NCBI RefSeq assembly: GCF_000150275.1
Contig: NW_002060965.1
Span: 496,001 to 560,000, forward strand
Reading direction: 5' to 3'
DNA from: Trichoplax adhaerens
Taxonomy: Eukaryota > Animalia > Placozoa
Length of the DNA stretch: 64,000 nt
Shown: positions 49,868 through 62,334 of the stretch, piece after piece
Numbering within the stretch: position 1 is the first letter of the stretch
Layout: every line of letters starts with the position of its first letter
Position numbers and translations under genes: made by a program
The notes under the pieces: generated by a model
Told to the model about the DNA's origin: nothing
The model's input: the letters and a program-made list of their open reading frames with translations, nothing else
Database searches by the model: none

Positions 49868-51157
49868 TTTGATAGAGTGAATTGGTCGATGGAACTTGCA
49901 ACTTTTGAGATCAATCAATCGGCGTACGCCAAGAAGCAAGAGATTGGAAAGATTGAAGAGTTCCACACAAAGCCAGTGTACACTGTACAGTATTACTGCA
50001 TTACGCTATATGCTGTACTGTAGATCATTTAAGGTATTAAACCGAACCTTACCTTTCTCAGGTCTACAGTACATATTACTGTACCCTACAATACAGGGTA
50101 CTGTACACTGTACGTACAGGACTGTACTGTACTGTATTAAACCGCACCGAACCTTACTCAGGTCTACAGTACATATTACTGTACGTACAGGACAGTACTG
50201 TACAGTACTGTACAGTACAGTACACTGTGCAGTACAGTACTTAGTGTGCTGCATTACACTATACTGTATACTGTAGATCATAAAGGTATTAAACCGAACC
50301 GAACCTTACTCAGGTCTACAGTACATATTACTGTACACTGTACAGGACTGTACTGTACACTGTGCAGTACTTAGTATGCTGTGGAAATGCCGGTGTGACG
50401 AGTGTAAACTGGTGTAAACTGTGTCAATATTGATTGATGGGGTGTGAATGAAGTGCATTGTACTGTAGTTACAGTCATGGACTACTAGCAAAGAACCGGT
50501 TCTGTTCTTTGCTAGTAGTCTACGTCACAGTTGGATGTGGCAAGCTACGTTACTCTACTGTGCTCTATAGTTTTACAGTATAACTGCTGTGTTTAGGTAG
50601 TGCTTTCTCACTTTTTTGCATTGCATGAAAACGTTTTTAAATTGGACGATTTTGTCATAATTACTTCCAGTTCAGTATAGTTTGTCATACGACTTCAAGG
50701 AGAAAAATTCAATTCAATTTGGGAATTTTCTATTTATTTATACAGTACCAGTGTACACTGTACAGTACTGTATACTAAAATGTACTGTCGACGAAAACAT
50801 GGGTTTGACCTTGTGTCATGCGTTGTGTCTACAGTATGTGTACTGTACAGGCTATAGTGTGAACTACTGTATCGTACAGTAGAAAAATGCAAGATGCAGT
50901 AACGACATGTACTGTACACTGTACCGTACTGTACAGTGTACAGTGTACAATGCTCATTGAACAGACCAGTACCTTAGTGTACTGTACACTGTAGAGTTCT
51001 AGTCAAACAACTCAATTACTGTACATATAAAGTAGTTGGACGGTCGAGAGAGATCTTCTGATAGTCATGAACGTCTAGTCTTGGACGCTTTTGGAAAATG
51101 GAGATAGATATTGATGACAGTTGAGTGATTGCTACCATCCTTTTGGAGTAATTGAAA
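49868..51157. promoter_or_regulatory. Probable bidirectional promoter region
   Basis: Head-to-head ATGs of NELFA (49867, -) and the GT31 gene (51158, +) lie 1.3 kb apart. Inferred from geometry only. Confidence 0.5.
49975..51025. repeat. Largest TACAG/TACTG array, including a triplicated ~50-130 bp unit, between divergent NELFA and GT31 genes
   Basis: The core TATTAAACCG..AACCTTAC..TCAGGTCTACAGTACATATTACTGTAC occurs at ~50035, 50135 and 50287, embedded in pentamer modules. Confidence 0.9.
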
Positions 51158-52363
51158 ATGTTAAGACAATTACTCACTGGTTCACCCAATAGACATAAGA
51201 TATTGATAGCATCGGTCGTCTTTTTCAGTATTTTATCGCTGACTTCCTTCTTTTTGTATGTGCGACGATATCAAATCCGATATTGTCATGATGGTAATTA
51301 TGATGAAAGCAGCGGAGCTTGCAAGAGATCGGTCATTAATGAACCTGAGCCCATTGTCAAAGAGATTATTCTATTACGCGGTCATAAGAAAGTTGGATAT
51401 AATGAAGAGGATCAATTTGATAAAGGCCCAAATAATCGCTATTTTGGCAGTGATGCTAAATGGTTTCTTGATTTACATATGAGGCAGGCAGTTCCAACTG
51501 CTACATCTTGTCGAAAGAACGTTGCAGTGGTGGTCATGATTCACAGTCATGTGAAGCATTTCATTCGACGAAAGGCTATTCGAAATTCTTGGGGTAATAC
51601 TAGTACGATACCATTTCCTATTGGTAGGATGCAAAAATCCAGTTGGAGAGTTTTATTTATTCTTGGACTCTCTTTTAATGCGACTGAAGATCAATTAGTT
51701 CGGCAAGAAGCCAAACGTCATGGTGATATGATCTTACTCGACATCTATGAAGAACGAGAATCGACCACATTAAAGACACTCTTAGCCATGTACTGGTTCT
51801 TTGTTCAATGCCCTTCGACCACATTCTATTTAAAATGTCAAGATGACGTCTTTATCAATCCTTACAGCTTAATCAGGTATATCATCTATTTAACAACTGG
51901 TAAAATGACTCGCGGCGTCTATGCCGGCCAGGTGTCACCAAGTGGTTTAACACCCCGTACCGATCACGGTGAAACGCTAGCTGTTTTAGCCAAGGAATAT
52001 CCAGATGTCTATATACCGGATTATTGTTTAGGATTTGCCTATCTTATGAGTAGGGATGTTGTGTCTACACTACTTCAAACTGTCGAGCACGTTCAAATGA
52101 TTACAACTGCTGATGATATTTATATTGGTGTACTAGCATTCAAAGCGAATATACGTCCACGACACTATCCTCACTTAATTCATACCTTTAATTTAGAAAG
52201 AAAAGTTGTGTACAAAATTAGTATTCGAGCATTAAGTGAGCGTATTGTCGAGCATGGTATTATTAATCATAAAGTTCAATTGATGCTACTCAATGCAGTT
52301 AAAGGTCGATTAGGCAGAAAGTGGAAAATACCTCGATCTCCTCAGCCCAGAGCCTACAAGTGA
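51158..52363 (+). CDS. Intronless GT31-family beta-1,3-glycosyltransferase (B3GALT/B3GNT-like, type II membrane)
   Basis: N-terminal TM, then RRKAIRNSWG, EAKRHGDMIL, TLKTL, FYLKCQDDVFIN, YIPDYCLGFAYLMS and DDIYIG. Confidence 0.9.
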   Translation: MLRQLLTGSPNRHKILIASVVFFSILSLTSFFLYVRRYQIRYCHDGNYDESSGACKRSVINEPEPIVKEIILLRGHKKVGYNEEDQFDKGPNNRYFGSDAKWFLDLHMRQAVPTATSCRKNVAVVVMIHSHVKHFIRRKAIRNSWGNTSTIPFPIGRMQKSSWRVLFILGLSFNATEDQLVRQEAKRHGDMILLDIYEERESTTLKTLLAMYWFFVQCPSTTFYLKCQDDVFINPYSLIRYIIYLTTGKMTRGVYAGQVSPSGLTPRTDHGETLAVLAKEYPDVYIPDYCLGFAYLMSRDVVSTLLQTVEHVQMITTADDIYIGVLAFKANIRPRHYPHLIHTFNLERKVVYKISIRALSERIVEHGIINHKVQLMLLNAVKGRLGRKWKIPRSPQPRAYK

Positions 52364-54426
52364 AGACACCATTGATTGATATATTCAATTCAACATTAAA
52401 ATGACTTGAGGCATAAATCTCCAACTGCATAATCCGGCTTTTACATATTAGCGTACGAGTATAACATTTTATATCCAATCAATATGATTCAAATGGATGT
52501 GGCCTATTTTCTACCTCTACACTTGATATAAAATTGGTCTCTACTACACGGATCATCGGCGATTCCGGACAGTGAATTATGGTTTGTGAGAGTAATCGCT
52601 GATACAGTTCAGTATAAATTTCTACAAGCGACAAAAATTAATTCAATTAGAAAAACGCAATATTTAGTTTCCAATAGATGGCTTGAATTTATTTCATAGA
52701 TAAAATTAAAATTTTTCTATGACTACAAGTACAGTACAGTACAATGTTAATAAACGTAGTGGAAGCCAAGGAATTATTCTCCTTAAAAGCCTATTTTTTG
52801 ATATCATTTATTTCTCCGACGGTATGCTCAACATTAAGCGACTACTTTTATTTTATGCTCCCTAATGTAATGTACAGTATTATATCATCGCGCTAAACTC
52901 ATTCCTATGTTGATTACATATTTTTATCATACGTAACGCAATATCGATAACTAAAAAGTTTCATCAAGTCAAAATTTGTAAAGTCTTAAGAATAAAGAAT
53001 TGATTATTTTTCACTATTATCTTAAACAATTGATATCTCTGATTTTCAATTTCTGTATAATCCTCGCCTTTGCCAACCTTAACCAATGGTTTTGGCTTGT
53101 GGCATACGATCTTTACGATCGATAATCTCTTGAACAAATTTTTTTTTTATCTAAAGGAATACAATACATAGTTCTTTATTACGCTTTGTACATAATCCTT
53201 CATTCGATGTGCCGTAATATGATTTGTCATATTTGTCTATGTATTGAAACAAATAAAAGTCTTAATTATTCCATGACTTCGATATCTATTACTTAGTATT
53301 AAATGCTACATATTTATGTACAACATGTCCATATGCGTATATACGGTCTATTCAGATTAGCATTTAAATTTCAATGAGACGATACGCAGCTCTTGATCTA
53401 AAAATTTTGACTGTCGGCGAATGCCAATATTCAACATACGATATCTAGATTAGAAAATCTCTAGTGATCACAACATTAGTAACAGTAGTGAATTTGCCAT
53501 TCATATCAAAGAATACAAATTTCACGAATTACAGTAACTTCAATGTTGGATGTCAATATTTGAGCAACATGTGAATTTGATTTTGTAACCTAACAAACAA
53601 GTTGACTATCCTCCGAGAATTATCCATTAATTACGCAAACTTGTTAATTTCGACAATAGTGGACTCAATCTCAATCGAAACCTAATACAATCAGATACAA
53701 TTGCTCTCTAATTAAATTATCAATCGGTAAACTTAAGTGATATCGATCTAAGAGATTGGATAAGTTCAATCTTTCAACAATAAGAACACGCGACCATATA
53801 ATCTTTTCAATTATAGATGGTTATGCAATCACAGAAAATAAGGAAATTCAGATTGGACCAGAAACTATATAGGTGCACGTGTTGGACTATTGACTTACAG
53901 TTAACAAATTCACTATACGAGCAACAGATACGATCAGATTTCACACATACAGGCAACTTCGATCATTTATTAATTTATAGTTTATTATATCATTAAATAT
54001 CCTTATTAGAATAGGTAAACTACCCAATTACTGAATTGGGCACTTACAATAAATAAATGAACTTGATACATTGTTGCTTGTTTAACGAAGCTCTCGCTAT
54101 TCTCCTTAATGCGTATACCCCAATTGACATTGAAGAAAATTAAATTCAATAACTTTTATGATAAAATTATCATCGTCTACTTGACTATTGTTACTCTAAT
54201 GATTGTAGAATATTTTACTGAATTCGTAGTAAATAACGCAACACTTAATAATAGTAATGATCTAAGAACCTATCAAGCAAACGAATAGTAAATAAGAAAG
54301 ACATAATTACAATTTGAGATGAAGTTTCCTGCTACAAATCCATCTTTAAATCTACCAGTTACTTAATAATGTCATGTGAATTATCAATCGATCAAGATGT
54401 TGAAATATATTGTGACTGGGGGCACT

Positions 54427-57400
54427 TCATGCATTGGTAGAACTGAAAAATAGCGAGAAAGAAATATTTAAAATCATGTTTTTAATTCCAATAAATAATT
54501 AATTGTATTACGAATATGCATGTATACCTGGAATCTGCTCCTTGAAAGATAGATTTTCTTGTCGATATAGCGTTGCCGAATGATAAAGCAGCGCATACAA
54601 TGGAGTAGCACAAAGTGACAATGAACATCGCCAGTTTAACGTTGCTCGAAATTTGCGGTTGTCTTTCATAAGTATAATCAAGTGCAGCATTGATTATAGC
54701 AAAAACGGAAACTATTGCAGTTATACAACTAAATCCAAAGAATGCCCCCTTCTATTGAATATATCAACAGCAAATTTTTAGTAAGCAGGCCCCAATTATT
54801 TTAAAGTACAGGATAAACATTTATCATATCAATCAGAGAAAAAAAAATTTACAAACCACATCCGAACGACCACAACGAAACATGTCAATCGCGGCAATTC
54901 CAGAAGCAAATACCTGATGGTAATAAATCAATAATTGTATAATTTAGTAACATCCTCGCTGAAGTCCCTGAATAGCCTTATTATAAAATATATATAATAC
55001 TATTGATCATCAACAGAAATCATCACTGAGAATTATCATCTTACCACGCTAGACAGTATAAAATTCATAGTACTATAAGCGTAACCAACAGTTAGAGTAG
55101 TACCGATACAAGCACAAGCAAAAATGACTAGGCCTAATAAAATCTGAAAAAGTCCATTCATCCAAGCTGAGCAGAAAAGGAGCCTCGGTATATTGGAAGC
55201 ATCAGATTTTCGACTGACTCGTTGCTGTCTAGCTGCAACAAAGTAACCAACTATGCCCAGAATCACAGCAGCCCCGCCACCGAGGGAAATCACAGCAATT
55301 ACAGCACGTAATTGAGAAGTTGCAAAATTCGCATCAAAGAGATGTTTATAAGCTACTGCAGCTGTGCATAACGCTCCTGCAGACTGCATAGAAGCCATAA
55401 AAAATAGGTTGCGGTGCCAGAAAGTCTATTTCGAATGATACAAAGGGAAAACTTACACTTTCAACTAAGGATATCAACACATTAGATATTGATTTCGATG
55501 ACCGCTGAAGCGGGCTAGAAATTATTGATTATGTACGTAGTATTGATCTTGACGATGTTTAGCAAAATAAAGATATGTTTCATGATAAAAAGATTAAAAA
55601 TTACTATCGCTTACTAGTACTGGTAGTCCGTTAACGTGAATAGCAAAGCCAAAAAAACCTGTAGTGAAGAGCTGTGTGCAGGAGAACAAGGATTAATTGT
55701 TAAAAATAATAAAAATTATAGTGTACAAAAATGGTAAAACTTTTGCAAAATAAATTGAAACGGTGAAAAGCTTATGCAGTCATAGGTATGTTTTAAGCGA
55801 ATATTAGATGTAAAGTTAGATAACATTATATGGCATTTGACCATTTATTAATTTCTAATTTAAAATAGCTTAATACTAGCATAACTACTATGGCGATGAC
55901 TATGACAATCGTGCGAATAAATAGATAGTAAAAATTACTACTTACAGCACCAGCGGCTTGATAAGACATTAACGTAAAAAAGTATCCTCCACCTGAACTA
56001 AATGTTGAAACGATCGCGGCTGTAAATAACAAAAGTCCATTGATAAACTGAATGATGCTATAAATCAGATTGAGAGAACAGCGTGATTTCTCTATGGATA
56101 GATTTCTATCTTCAGGGGTAATAGCATTTTCATCTTTGGATTCGTTTCTGAAACTCATTTCACCGTCTGCCGAATACATTTCAGATCCAGTAGATTCTTT
56201 AGTGATCTTATAAATAGTAATTATAATCCAAAAGTTGGCAGTGACAGTTACGGCACATACACCAATGAGTAAACCAAAAATAGCCATTTGGGTAGTAACA
56301 AATCGTATCAATCCGGCGTTAAAAATTTGAGCATATCGGACTATAGCAGTGATTACACTGACTTGATTCCAGACAGAAAATATACCCACACCACCTAACT
56401 GTGATCATTGAAAGGTAGTATTAGCAATATTAACAATATTTACTAATTTACCATCCACCTATGCATGCTTTAGTGTGTTAGTAAGTGATGATCATAACCT
56501 TCATCATGATTTAACCACAAAGAGGAGATTGCCAGACAGTACAACAATGTAAACAAGTAACAAATTATAATTATAGGGCATCAAATAGACGAGCTTGTAA
56601 ACAATATACAGTCATCATCAGTAGACTACTACTCTTACTCGACTGATAGATAGTACAGAACTAGTTAATCTAAAGTAATATACGACATATCGATAGTTTG
56701 ACAATTTGTGTCATTAGATACTTTCATCAAAAATGCATTTCTTATGCGAACTAAAGACTTTTCACTAGGCCTCGATATTTTTCTAAAATATATGCGTATC
56801 ATGTCGCCTAGTTAAATACAAATTCACTTTCAATGATTTACAACGATTGTTGTTCAACACTATTTGAAATGAGGTGTCATATATAATATCGATTTGCACC
56901 ATACACGGAGTAAAAATAGAGCACAGACTTACTGTTTTCGATGATTCTTGCTTATTATGGTAGTAAGCCATAAGCCCACATCCTAAAGACTGTATTAAGA
57001 AATCAATACGTGTAATAAGTTATATGGTGCAAAATATGTTCATTCCAATCGTAAGCGAATTGTCATCGGCGTAAGATGAAGGGTTAAAGTTAGGATAAAA
57101 CTCATGCCGAAAATATAGCCAAAATTTCATTCACATAGTAAGTATAATTTAAGTAATCATTATTTCGTTCAATGATAATGTACAATATCGTTGATTAAGG
57201 TAGAATTGTGTGATTACCAAGTTAGTTGTAAAGAAATTGTTTATAGCTAAGGTAGATCAATAGATGCAGTCTCTGCAAAATGATAGAATATTCAGAAATA
57301 AGTATCTCACGGTGAAGATATCAGAAAAACGTCAAACAGACTGCATCGATACGAGTTTTGGAGCCAATCTACTGTCTTCCACGCCATTTTAAAGTTGTGA

Positions 57401-58626
57401 TTGATCGTGTATTCTTCAATATGTTGGTACTGAAAGAGCTATTATCATGTTCCTATCGTGAAGTTTCTGTATAACTATTATTCACTGTCAAGTCATTAAC
57501 TTATCATAAAGTATGAAAGTATTGAAAGAGTAATCAACTATCATGTTTGGTAATGAATTTTTCTGTTCAATATTCAAGTATTTAACATAATTAATGAAGT
57601 ACGCTATTTGTTTGCATCGCGTAACAGATGGAGTATGCCAGTGTACAGAACTGTATGCGTTGATTAAGTTCCATTTTCTTGTTGAAGAAATGACCTTGAA
57701 TAATCGCTGAGTGCATCCAAATCATAGTAAGTAGAATTAAATTTGTAAAACTCTATTCTAGTAACAAACTTGTGCGATCATCTTTATTTTTTACTAGCGC
57801 ACAGAATATCTCTATCATGTACTGGAAATAGTCGATGTATAGTACTTGATGGACTATTCTAATTTCTAACTGACAATAAGCAAGTTGATGAATTATTGTT
57901 GCTATTTTGACAGTATAGCAAAACTGGTATATGGTTCATGATTTTATTCCAGTTTGAATAACTGATAAAGGGTAATCGATCCTTCTACAATATACGTAAA
58001 ACAAGATTATTCAAGAGACAGTGAAAAAAATAATTTTAGAATAAATGCAAAAGTACCGTGCATTAACGTTAACGCTAATGATAGTCACTGATTTTTTCTG
58101 TTACTCTGCTTGAGCAAACAGTTGGGAAATTAAGTTTACTGTACGCAGTACAGTATTAATAATAAACACTTTAATCATTTCCTTGATAAGCAAGGAAATG
58201 ACATCATGTCTTAATACAAGGATACGTTATATCGAGTAGTCTACTCTCCTCCAGTCCTAAAACTGATTAGTTATAGTTATTATAAATAAATATATATTGC
58301 GTCATGATAATTAATTCATGTATTTTAACTATTATACAAGTGTCTAATGATGAAAATGATACGGCATTTATCTATTTTGGCCCATACTACACTTTTACTG
58401 TACTTGAGATCAACGTTGTCACTTCAAGTAAAGCAAACGCTCTCAACACTAGGTTGGATTGATCAGCTTAGTTATCTCTTACCGTTATCGAACATATAGC
58501 GGGAATCGTACATAAGGTTCCTGTATTGGCATTGCCGATCCACTCGATTGGTAGAACAATGCTCATTATAAACTGAAATAACCCCAAAACGATGTAAGCA
58601 TGGCTAATTCGCCCTATAGTAGCCAT
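54427..58626 (-). CDS. ~462-aa, ~12-TM protein of three tandem MS4A/CD20-like tetraspan modules
   Basis: Exons 58626-58483, 56989-56933, 56398-55946, 55671-55615, 55425-55045, 54913-54857, 54751-54528 and 54442-54427 total 1389 nt, all GT-AG and in phase. A TM1 motif repeats three times: LGLFQFIMSIV / YSIIQFINGLL / NGLFQILLGLV. Confidence 0.75.
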
Positions 58627-58803: not shown

Positions 58804-58930
58804 TACAGTACAGTACTGTACAGTACTGTAGGTGCATACTGTAGATGCAGTACTGTACTGTACAGTACACAGTACAGTACAGTACATTGTACAGTACAGG
58901 GTGTCTCATACTGTACGGTACTGTACTGCA
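58804..58930. repeat. Mixed TACAG/TACTG array just upstream of the 12-TM gene
   Basis: Nearly pure pentamer modules starting about 180 bp 5' of ATG 58626. Contains TACAGGGTGTCTCA at 58895-58908. Confidence 0.85.
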
Positions 58931-60712: not shown

Positions 60713-62334
60713 ATGGCAAATCCAAATATCCACGGAGCGATTAATGGAGTCAGCCTAAATTATTTAGTCGATTCAATTATTAGTAGTAACAATCAAGACT
60801 CACCAGCAGATAGATCGGAAGTCAATCCAACAGAACACTGTTTCAATATTTCATTAGATGCTGCGAGTTTGCCATCGCAAGGTAGCTCAACTGAGACATC
60901 GCCTAGCCATGATGGATTTCAAGCTGGCTCTATGATAACATCGAATTCATCTCAAATGCACGTGAAATTACTTCGTAATGATATGTGGCATGCTTTTGCA
61001 GCTATAGGAACTGAAATGATCATCACTAAAGCAGGACGGTAACCAATCGTAGTTAATAAGAAATATTGATTGAATACAGGAAACTGATTAGTCTGTTTTG
61101 AAGTAAATTATTTTACTGTTCATGACAGCGAGTATGTTAGATAAATACTATCACCTATTGTATGTCATTGCACGTGTTTTTTTACTGTAGAGAATGCTTA
61201 ATTTTATTTTTACAGGCGCCTTTTCCCTACTATTGATATCCATACAAGTGGTCTCGATCCGAATGGATTTTACTCTATCAAGGTGGACATCGCTGCAGCG
61301 GATGACAACCGCTATAAATATGTATCTACAACCGGATGGGTTGCAGCATCAAACGGGAATAGAGTAAATCATATAGCTGATCAGGTAGTTTTTGGGGAAT
61401 GTGAACACCCAAACTCTCCAAATTCTGGTAAATTTTGGATGAGTTGCGAAACCATTAGCTTTAAAAAGCTAAAATTGAGCAACAGCAAAGAACACTACAA
61501 GAAAAGCGATTGCGTAAGCAAGCATAAAATGTCATTGCTGCTTTGATCAACTTAACTCATTATGTACAGTATGTGTTTACCATAACTATAAATTTTTGAA
61601 TCCTTACTTAGATTGTACTGAATTCAATGAGAAGATACCAGCCAAGAATTGTGATTAGCAAATGGGATCGCGATCATACTGCTCCGGTCGATACAAAAAT
61701 TATAATCTTTCCAGAAACGAGATTTTATGCGGTCACTTGCTACCAAAATGGCCAGGTAAAAATACTTTATTACAGAGTAAAGGTGTAATGTGATGAAAGT
61801 AAGTAAAGCACAGAATTTTTTTTATCTTTGTTTAATTCATGTTAGATTACCAATCTGAAAATTCGCTATAATCCATTTGCGAAAGCTTTTCGAGATAGTA
61901 AGAGATCACAGTTAGGGGCAACAGGTGAATACAGCATCTTTGGTTATCCTCGAAATGCATTCATCAACTCGCAATTTCAGCCGTGTGTTCAATACCCAGT
62001 GTATGGGTATTATCCTAACTGTGTTAATCCAAGCCAATTGCCTACTGAACGTGGTAATAATAGAGCACTTCGAAATGAAAGACCCAATACTTTCCGACCT
62101 GATAGTGCGATTGCCACCTACTCAAGCCGAAATATGCAAAGTACATCCATGCAAGGCTATCTTGTCTCTCCATTGGCACCTGCTCTTCCATATAATAATT
62201 CTTCTAGCACTTCGCTGTGTCAGCCAGATATTGCTAGCGGTAGATATCCCTCATTAATACCGTCATTTGAAAGCCACCATCAACTTCCGCCGCCGCCGGC
62301 GTATCGTGAATGGCCATCAACACCATTTATGTGA
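60713..62334 (+). CDS. Divergent T-box transcription factor (class unassigned)
   Basis: Exons 60713-61038, 61216-61513, 61612-61755 and 61846-62334 give GTEMIITKAGRRLFP, HPNSPNSGKFWM, LNSMRRYQPR and [33 protein letters not shown], followed by a Pro/Ser/Tyr-rich tail. Confidence 0.95.

What the first reader, a model, noticed from the sequence alone, without database searches (positions are those of the whole stretch)
54427..58626. Hidden 12-TM protein: a covalent trimer of MS4A/CD20-like tetraspan modules
Seen: the ORF track shows two unrelated-looking fragments, but eight exons join into one 462-aa frame. Three modules share one layout: TM1 with a central Gln (GLFQF / SIIQF / GLFQI), an exactly 57-nt phase-0 exon finishing TM2 (SLGCGLMAYYHNKQESSKT; LFTTGFFGFAIHVNGLPVL; VFASGIAAIDMFRCGRSDV), then two more hydrophobic helices. 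Identical exon size with low sequence identity implies an old intragenic triplication. Established: MS4A proteins are single 4-TM units that oligomerise, and some act as non-GPCR chemosensors in mouse necklace neurons. Inference: this may be a pre-assembled pseudo-trimeric receptor or channel in a probably neuron-less animal. The MS4A assignment is by eye only.
Basis: partly seen in the sequence, partly recalled or inferred. Interest (0 to 1): 0.8.

Follow-up and report, generated by a model that had tools for sequence, protein, structure and literature searches.

The report
Triple CD20-like 12-helix membrane protein
A Trichoplax gene encodes one 462-residue membrane protein made of three diverged four-helix units that share their exon plan with the animal's CD20/MS4A-like genes; it is conserved in placozoans, a sister strain already lists it as a hypothetical protein, and its function is unknown.

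Summary
On the minus strand, eight exons with AG/GT borders (54427-58626) give 1389 nt, or 462 aa, with 12 hydrophobic helices. Three of the exons are exactly 57 nt and phase 0. The genome is Trichoplax adhaerens. Its public model (TRIADDRAFT_61477, 406 aa) has exons 1-6 but a different last exon. A divergent placozoan (57% identity) keeps exons 1-7 and all three 57-nt exons.

The triplication rests mainly on the repeated exon plan and topology. Sequence similarity between modules is weak. The CD20/MS4A link is indirect but real:
- Three single-unit genes elsewhere in this genome match Pfam CD20 and have the same plan: TM1-TM2a exon, 57-nt phase-0 exon, TM3-TM4 exon.
- Module 3 matches their profile above controls.
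- Language-model features point to CD20.

Pfam itself does not hit the protein, and no usable fold model was obtained. A pseudo-trimeric pore or receptor is untested. The scan has noted other triple CD20-like genes on other DNA of this genome. Tandem MS4A proteins are published for vertebrates.

The parts
58483..58626 (-). Exon 1 (144 nt): ATG, short N-terminus, then TM1, outer loop 1 and the first half of TM2 of module 1
   Evidence: ATG preceded by an in-frame TGA; donor GTAAGA in phase 0; 65% identical in the divergent placozoan at L006:169-312
56933..56989 (-). Exon 2 (57 nt, phase 0/0): second half of TM2 and the basic inner loop of module 1
   Evidence: AG/GTAAGT borders; a 57-nt counterpart at L005:462-518
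55946..56398 (-). Exon 3 (453 nt): TM3-TM4 of module 1, a 44-residue acidic cytosolic linker, then TM1 and the first half of TM2 of module 2
   Evidence: Continuous frame across the module 1/2 junction; 51% identical in L005:1208-1663; identical stretch in P0001 residues 68-218
55615..55671 (-). Exon 4 (57 nt, phase 0/0): second half of TM2 of module 2
   Evidence: AG/GTAAGC borders; a 57-nt counterpart at L005:1839-1895
55045..55425 (-). Exon 5 (381 nt): TM3-TM4 of module 2, a basic linker, then TM1 and the first half of TM2 of module 3
   Evidence: Continuous frame across the module 2/3 junction; 58% identical in L005:2084-2470
54857..54913 (-). Exon 6 (57 nt, phase 0/0): second half of TM2 of module 3
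   Evidence: AG acceptor and GTTTGT donor, the same donor in the divergent placozoan at L005:2593-2649
54528..54751 (-). Exon 7 (224 nt): TM3-TM4 of module 3; missing from the public T. adhaerens model
   Evidence: 65% identical in L005:2753-2970; present in the H2 protein P0003; best hit in the whole window of a profile built only from the CD20-like unit genes (E 0.0032, next 0.22)
54427..54442 (-). Exon 8 (16 nt): last five residues and the TGA stop
   Evidence: Acceptor after a T-rich tract; gives 462 aa as in P0003. Not testable in the divergent placozoan because the contig ends.
53079..53150 (-). Alternative terminal exon used by the public 406-aa model TRIADDRAFT_61477 in place of exons 7-8; probably a mis-prediction or a minor isoform
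   Evidence: The tail of P0001 maps here. It would cut module 3 after TM2.

Best explanation
This is one real, conserved gene of Trichoplax adhaerens. It encodes a 462-residue integral membrane protein with 12 helices arranged as three four-helix units in tandem. Each unit descends from a small three-exon gene of the placozoan CD20/MS4A-like tetraspan type: an exon for TM1 plus the first half of TM2, a 57-nt phase-0 exon, and an exon for TM3-TM4. Three such genes lying head to tail were fused by read-through. The last exon of one unit became continuous with the first exon of the next, which explains why the fused gene alternates large exons with 57-nt exons. All three units have the same orientation, with N-terminus, linkers and C-terminus in the cytosol. 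Inferred, not shown: the three bundles sit side by side and stand in for the homo-oligomer that CD20-family proteins and MLC1 form. On that view the protein acts as a non-enzymatic membrane organiser or auxiliary subunit of other membrane proteins, rather than as a classical transporter.
For: Gene model; H2 protein with 4 differences in 462; same neighbours, T-box and Galactosyl_T, in H2. Conservation: exons 1-7 and all three 57-nt exons are kept at 57% identity in a divergent placozoan; dN 0.31 against dS about 1.2. The fusion lies inside exons 3 and 5. Topology: 12 helices; K+R count is 21 inside and 5 outside, and 16 and 5 in the relative. Repeat: alignments anchored on the exon junctions give z 3.5 for M1-M3 and 4.3 for M2-M3; hhalign M2-M3 gives P 0.015. 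CD20 link: Pfam CD20 hits the TM1 exons of three other loci (hmmscan 1.3e-4 and 1.3e-3). These loci have the identical exon plan, and Gly sits at position 5 of the 57-nt exon in every unit and every module. Their exon-A profile finds only CD20 chains in the PDB, with the alignment ending at the exon border, although E is 2.9-6.6. Module 3 against the unit profile gives P 7.9e-4, with controls at 0.014 or worse. A profile of exon C from the units alone picks exon 7 first among 1395 six-frame segments. In the ESM Atlas the top clusters are CD20, at 0.87/171 features for the whole protein and 0.86-0.85 for module 3.
Against: Pfam CD20 gives no hit on P0001, P0003 or single exons at E<=10. phmmer against PDB sequences finds nothing. 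Modules 1 and 2 are not above the noise of reversed controls against the unit profile. A profile of the modules' TM1-TM2a pieces finds no PDB chain, and matches the units over only 9 residues at P 0.039. Atlas scores are below 0.9, which counts as a lead only. The Atlas structure neighbours of module 3 are mostly generic bacterial helix bundles; one MS4A15-like cluster appears at TM 0.56. The TM1 Gln is not conserved in modules 1 and 2. The AlphaFold2 models are poor (pLDDT 45-47), so the fold and the packing are untested. No transcript was seen with these tools. Nothing bears directly on function.
Confidence: 0.7

Rival explanations
1. A genuine internal triplication of a four-helix unit, but from a placozoan-only tetraspan family unrelated to CD20/MS4A. 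The resemblance in hydrophobic motifs and exon plan would then be convergent, or shared only with other placozoan genes that are themselves not true CD20 relatives.
For: Pfam CD20 does not hit the protein. Only two proteins in 1.84 billion representatives match exon 3, and both are placozoan. The unit genes reach only 17-22 bits on one exon, below the 27.9-bit cut-off. Zuccolo et al. 2010 judged invertebrate look-alikes to be convergent (PMC2826416).
Against: The only PDB chains the unit profile finds are CD20, aligned up to the exon border. CD20 clusters come first in both Atlas feature searches. [quoted passage not shown]
Confidence: 0.22
2. A diverged member of a known 12-TM transporter or channel superfamily, for example MFS-like, in which the 3 x 4 periodicity is incidental.
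For: It has twelve helices. Several polar residues inside the helices are conserved: E28, N78/Q79, Q214, Q251, N327/Q331, N358 and D374.
Against: No Pfam transporter family is hit at E<=10. Foldseek gives TM-scores of 0.29 or less against all PDB chains, although the model is poor. The exon plan and topology repeat every four helices, not six. The Atlas neighbours are four-helix families.
Confidence: 0.04
3. The model is a gene-prediction artefact: the exons belong to two or three separate small genes, or the last two helices are not part of the message, as in the public 406-aa model.
For: The public T. adhaerens model skips exons 7-8. The exon 6 donor is weak (GTTTGT). No transcript evidence was reachable here.
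Against: Module junctions lie inside continuous exons with the frame kept, and the indels in the relative are whole codons. Exon 7 is 65% identical in the divergent placozoan, and the GTTTGT donor is conserved. The H2 annotation gives the same 462-aa product.
Confidence: 0.04

Closest known systems
CD20/MS4A family (Pfam PF04103, CD20-like), including the single-unit CD20-like genes of Trichoplax found here at G000:C1409:5.090-5.097 Mb and C1408:3.614-3.619 Mb
   Same: Both have four helices per unit with cytosolic ends, a short first outer loop and a basic inner loop after TM2. TM1 carries a central polar residue followed by a small or Gly residue. Both split TM2 with a phase-0 intron, have a 57-nt exon with Gly at position 5, and encode TM3-TM4 in one exon.
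   Different: Here three units sit in one chain. The Pfam model does not detect the protein. The outer loops are short and lack the Cys pair of CD20. Modules 1 and 2 have lost most family motifs.
Tandem MS4A proteins of chicken, platypus and opossum (Zuccolo et al. 2010, PMC2826416)
   Same: Two to six MS4A units are concatenated in one polypeptide. That paper takes this as a sign that the family works as oligomers.
   Different: Those are recent duplications of clearly recognisable MS4A units in vertebrates. Here there are three units, they are old and very diverged, and the protein is found only in placozoans.
MLC1 (Membrane_MLC1, PF27925)
   Same: MLC1 is an 8-TM protein that forms trimers (abstract of PMC8633789). 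MLC1 clusters rank just after CD20 in the Atlas feature search, and one Atlas cluster carries both families.
   Different: MLC1 has eight helices and oligomerises non-covalently. Its family model is absent from the local Pfam copy, so membership could not be tested.
Sarcospan (SSPN)
   Same: [quoted passage not shown]
   Different: It has a single unit. The middle exon appears to be about 87 bp, judged from the sizes of two PCR products, not 57. It has a large outer loop.

Membership tests
CD20-like / MS4A (Pfam PF04103) | Match to the Pfam CD20 profile at or above the gathering score (27.9 bits) | tested here: not met
   hmmscan of exon translations, P0001 and P0003 at E<=10 gave no CD20 hit. 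A six-frame search of the genome with PF04103 did not pick this locus.
CD20-like / MS4A (Pfam PF04103) | Four-helix unit with cytosolic N- and C-termini, a short first outer loop and a basic inner loop after TM2 | tested here: met
   Prediction only. There are 12 hydrophobic helices. The K+R count is 21 inside and 5 outside (16 and 5 in the relative) for the N-in topology, repeated in each module.
CD20-like / MS4A (Pfam PF04103) | TM1 motif with a central Gln (LGAxQI..G type) | tested here: inconclusive
   Gln is present in all three modules of T. adhaerens and H2. In the divergent placozoan it is His, Tyr and Gln. The module TM1 profile aligns to the unit TM1 motif over 9 residues at P 0.039.
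CD20-like / MS4A (Pfam PF04103) | Family gene plan: phase-0 intron inside TM2, short phase-0 exon finishing TM2, and TM3-TM4 in the next exon | tested here: met
   The plan is identical in the three Trichoplax loci that match Pfam CD20: 57-nt exons at L007:1803-1859, L011:1740-1796 and L010 reverse strand 1928-1984. Whether vertebrate MS4A genes have the same 57-nt exon is only my recollection and could not be checked. Sarcospan has a three-exon plan.
CD20-like / MS4A (Pfam PF04103) | Profile-level sequence similarity to accepted members | tested here: inconclusive
   Module 3 against the unit profile gives P 7.9e-4, colinear over 131 columns, with 12 controls at 0.014 or worse. Exon 7 is the top hit of the units-only profile (E 0.0032). 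Modules 1 and 2 are at noise level. The units themselves are sub-threshold CD20 matches.
CD20-like / MS4A (Pfam PF04103) | CD20-type four-helix-bundle fold | tested here: inconclusive
   The AlphaFold2 models have pLDDT 44.6 and 46.8, and Foldseek on the second of them was meaningless. The Atlas holds its own model of the protein (pTM 0.79). Its neighbours for module 3 include one MS4A15-like cluster (TM 0.56) among generic helix bundles.
MLC1 (PF27925) | Match to the Membrane_MLC1 profile | not testable with these tools
   The family is absent from the local Pfam copy. Only Atlas feature scores of 0.83-0.84 are available.
12-TM transporters (MFS and similar) | Profile or fold match to a transporter family, with 6+6 internal symmetry | tested here: not met
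   There is no Pfam hit. Foldseek TM-scores are 0.29 or less, on a poor model. The periodicity is four helices, not six.

The most novel reading that the evidence does not exclude
The three covalently linked CD20-like bundles form a pseudo-threefold assembly with a central polar path lined by the conserved in-membrane Glu, Asp, Asn and Gln residues. It would work as a pre-assembled ion-conducting or ligand-sensing unit in an animal without neurons. The 57-nt TM2 exon would be an ancient marker tying placozoan CD20-like genes to vertebrate MS4A genes, against the published view that invertebrates lack MS4A-like genes.
Probability: 0.12. Interest if true: 0.7.

Novelty: new variant of a known kind. 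Interest (0 to 1): 0.45.

Why it matters
The working oligomeric state of CD20/MS4A-type tetraspans is still debated, as is whether they conduct ions or only organise other receptors. A natural single-chain concatemer with a fixed number of units is a ready-made tool for that question: its stoichiometry and unit order are fixed by the gene. The shared exon plan also gives a sequence-independent character for tracing this very fast-evolving family back to early animals, where ordinary profile searches fail. For Trichoplax annotation, it shows that the public T. adhaerens model lacks the last two helices.

Tried and rejected
- Pfam on single exons, P0001 and P0003 gave no CD20 hit and only sub-threshold noise, such as Peptidase_M50B at E 4.6e-4, below its cut-off.
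- The word search with exon 3 and with P0001 found nothing beyond the protein itself.
- The full HMMER search with exon 3 found only P0001 and one placozoan fragment.
- Searches of the own genome with exon 3, exon 5, P0003 and a TM3-TM4 profile found no paralogue. The other triple-unit genes that the scan noted are therefore too diverged to link by sequence here.
- hhalign in global mode gave nonsense. hmmsearch of the unit profile against the locally joined proteins gave nothing.
- phmmer and profile searches of PDB sequences with the protein, and with the modules' TM1-TM2a pieces, found nothing.
- MAFFT mis-aligned short orthologue fragments onto the wrong module.
- AlphaFold2 without an alignment, and with a 5-row alignment, stayed below pLDDT 47. 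Foldseek on the latter was uninformative.
- Complex prediction, tried for the three modules as chains, was not available.
- Looking up the exact H2 protein found only the H2 genome, with no transcript contig.
- Literature searches for the size of the vertebrate MS4A TM2 exon and for the locus tag found nothing.
- My last word search, with exon C of a unit gene, returned only two unannotated placozoan fragments.
- Step left out: my own joined 462-aa translation was never sent to any search or fold tool. Searches were done exon by exon by reference, or with the public proteins P0001 and P0003. The joined frame was assembled only inside scripts for local statistics.
Full report
**What is in the sequence.** The window is AT-rich eukaryotic DNA (34% G+C). 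It lies in a 105.6-Mb assembly of 1414 contigs, which is Trichoplax adhaerens: the locus encodes XP_002117478, TRIADDRAFT_61477. On the minus strand, eight exons between 58626 and 54427 are bordered by AG acceptors and GT donors. Together they make 1389 nt, or 462 codons plus TGA. Exons 2, 4 and 6 are each exactly 57 nt and phase 0 on both sides. Hydropathy shows 12 hydrophobic stretches. Both AlphaFold2 models, although poor, contain 12 long helices at the same places.

**Is the model real?** There are three independent supports.
- *H2 protein.* Its 90% cluster also holds P0003, RDD45480.1 of Trichoplax sp. H2. This protein is 462 aa long and differs from the joined model at only four residues, without indels. 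The H2 locus has the same neighbours, a T-box gene and a Galactosyl_T gene, and AG/GT at every border.
- *Divergent placozoan.* The big HMMER search with exon 3 found one further protein, P0002, a fragment from two Logan assemblies. The two contigs overlap and carry counterparts of exons 1 to 7, in order, at 51-65% identity for the large exons. Exon sizes are 144/57/456/57/387/57/218 nt, all three 57-nt exons are kept, and the odd GTTTGT donor after exon 6 is the same. Overall protein identity is 57%. dN is 0.31 against a nearly saturated dS of about 1.2, which indicates purifying selection.

Exon 7, which the public T. adhaerens model lacks, is the best-conserved large exon (65%). The 462-aa form is therefore the right one. 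The module junctions lie inside exons 3 and 5 in a continuous frame, so the three modules cannot be separate genes unless internal promoters exist.

**Topology.** With the helices placed as, Lys and Arg number 21 in the loops assigned to the cytosol and 5 in the outer loops (16 and 5 in the relative). By the positive-inside rule this gives a cytosolic N-terminus, linkers and C-terminus, with all three modules in the same orientation. The TM2 helices are the best conserved helices of modules 1 and 3 (0.75 and 0.77). In module 2, TM3 (0.74) exceeds TM2 (0.64). The TM4 helices are the least conserved (0.44-0.55). Several polar residues inside helices are conserved.

**Internal triplication.** Plain sequence similarity between modules is weak.
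- Smith-Waterman z-scores against shuffles are 0.7, 1.4 and 3.1.
- hhalign P-values are 0.18, 0.78 and 0.015, although all three alignments are colinear.
- Ungapped alignments anchored on the 57-nt exons do better: z reaches 3.5 for M1-M3 and 4.3 for M2-M3 in T. adhaerens, and 3.5 and 2.5 in the relative.

The strong argument is structural. The same sequence of features recurs three times and is kept in a distant relative: TM1, a short loop, half of TM2, a phase-0 intron, 57 nt, a phase-0 intron, then TM3 and TM4. Gly sits at position 5 of every 57-nt exon in both species.

**Relation to CD20/MS4A.** Pfam CD20 does not hit the protein, and PDB sequences give nothing.
- *Unit genes.* A six-frame search of the genome with PF04103 found three other loci, each matching profile positions 1-41/42, the TM1 region. 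hmmscan of those exons alone gave E 1.3e-4 and 1.3e-3.
- *Their exon plan.* I reconstructed these genes. Each has an exon ending in phase 0 after an 'APIW.G' stretch, then a 57-nt phase-0 exon beginning Y-x-x-[AS]-G, then one exon with TM3 and TM4. This is exactly the plan of each module.
- *PDB check.* A profile of their first exons finds only three PDB sequences at E<=10, all CD20. The alignment ends at 'PLWGGIM', which is at the exon border. The E-values of 2.9-6.6 are not significant on their own.
- *Module 3.* It aligns with the unit profile over 131 colinear columns at P 7.9e-4. Twelve reversed or out-of-register controls gave 0.014 or worse.
- *Exon 7.* A profile made only from the units' last exons ranks exon 7 first among all 1395 six-frame segments of the window (E 0.0032, next 0.22).
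- *Modules 1 and 2.* They are not above noise, though module 1 keeps the Pro and module 1 TM4 a Gly-x-Cys seen in the units.
- *ESM Atlas.* The feature search puts CD20 clusters first, at 0.87 with 171 shared features for the whole protein and 0.86, 0.86 and 0.85 for module 3. MLC1 clusters follow. These scores are leads only.

**Most economical history.** Three tandem three-exon unit genes were fused by read-through. Two of the Pfam-matching unit genes lie about 4 kb apart on one strand, the kind of arrangement from which such a fusion could start.

**What could not be done.** The Atlas says it holds a model of the protein with pTM 0.79, but it cannot be read here. Searches used exon references or the public proteins, and the joined frame existed only inside scripts. 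No transcript evidence was reachable. That vertebrate MS4A genes also carry a 57-nt TM2 exon is my recollection only, and the literature searches did not settle it. Sarcospan, described as homologous to CD20, does have three small coding exons, with exons 1-2 giving TM1-TM2. Its middle exon seems to be about 87 bp.

**Function.** Nothing here bears on function directly. By analogy with CD20, the FcεRI β subunit and MLC1 (established knowledge, with the abstract of PMC8633789 for MLC1 trimers), the most likely role is a non-enzymatic organiser or auxiliary subunit of other membrane proteins, with three bundles replacing a homo-oligomer. The outer loops are short (8-16 residues) and lack a Cys pair, which argues against a large ligand-binding ectodomain. 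The conserved polar residues inside helices keep a conducting or small-ligand-binding role open. I put about 0.3 on the organiser reading and 0.12 on a pore or sensor.

**Novelty.** The protein is public as a hypothetical protein in H2. Tandem MS4A proteins with two to six units are published for chicken, platypus and opossum, and the same paper concluded that invertebrates lack MS4A-like genes (PMC2826416). No paper in the library links MS4A and Trichoplax in substance. The scan's own earlier notes describe other triple CD20-like genes and CD20-like gene clusters on other pieces of this genome. I could not link them to this gene by sequence. This is therefore a further, very diverged example of a theme that recurs in this genome: a new variant of a known kind.

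Noticed in passing
window 58804-58928: Arrays of the pentamers TACAG and TACTG (19 and 4 copies) lie 180-300 bp upstream of the gene's ATG. This is the same kind of array another note describes at 49975-51025.
   Followed up: partly
window 53079-53150 (-): The public T. adhaerens model TRIADDRAFT_61477 ends in a 23-residue exon here instead of exons 7-8, which cuts off the last two helices. This is a likely annotation error, or a minor isoform worth checking in RNA-seq.
   Followed up: partly
window 51152-52363 (+) and 60713-62334 (+): The flanking genes are a 403-codon open frame, whose H2 counterpart carries Pfam Galactosyl_T, and T-box gene exons containing the 'GTEMIITK' motif. The same neighbours flank the H2 orthologue.
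   Followed up: partly
G000:C1409:5090438-5096893 (L007, L009, L011) and G000:C1408:3614632-3618963 (L008, L010): Three single-unit CD20-like genes, two of them in tandem, each have a 57-nt phase-0 exon finishing TM2. The C1408 gene has an 'LGAIQ' TM1 and a long Asn/Ser/Thr-rich cytosolic tail exon.
   Followed up: partly
L005/L006 (Logan SRR30664517, SRR30660616): This unnamed placozoan has only 57% protein identity for this gene. Its last three introns have almost the same lengths as in T. adhaerens (188, 122 and 103 against 189, 131 and 105 nt), and blastn runs through introns 5 and 6 at about 65% identity.
   Followed up: no
window 55946-56089 region; protein residues 131-174: The acidic linker between modules 1 and 2 keeps two short motifs in both placozoans, 'SEMYS.D' and 'N.I.PE'. 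These could be phosphorylation or sorting signals.
   Followed up: no
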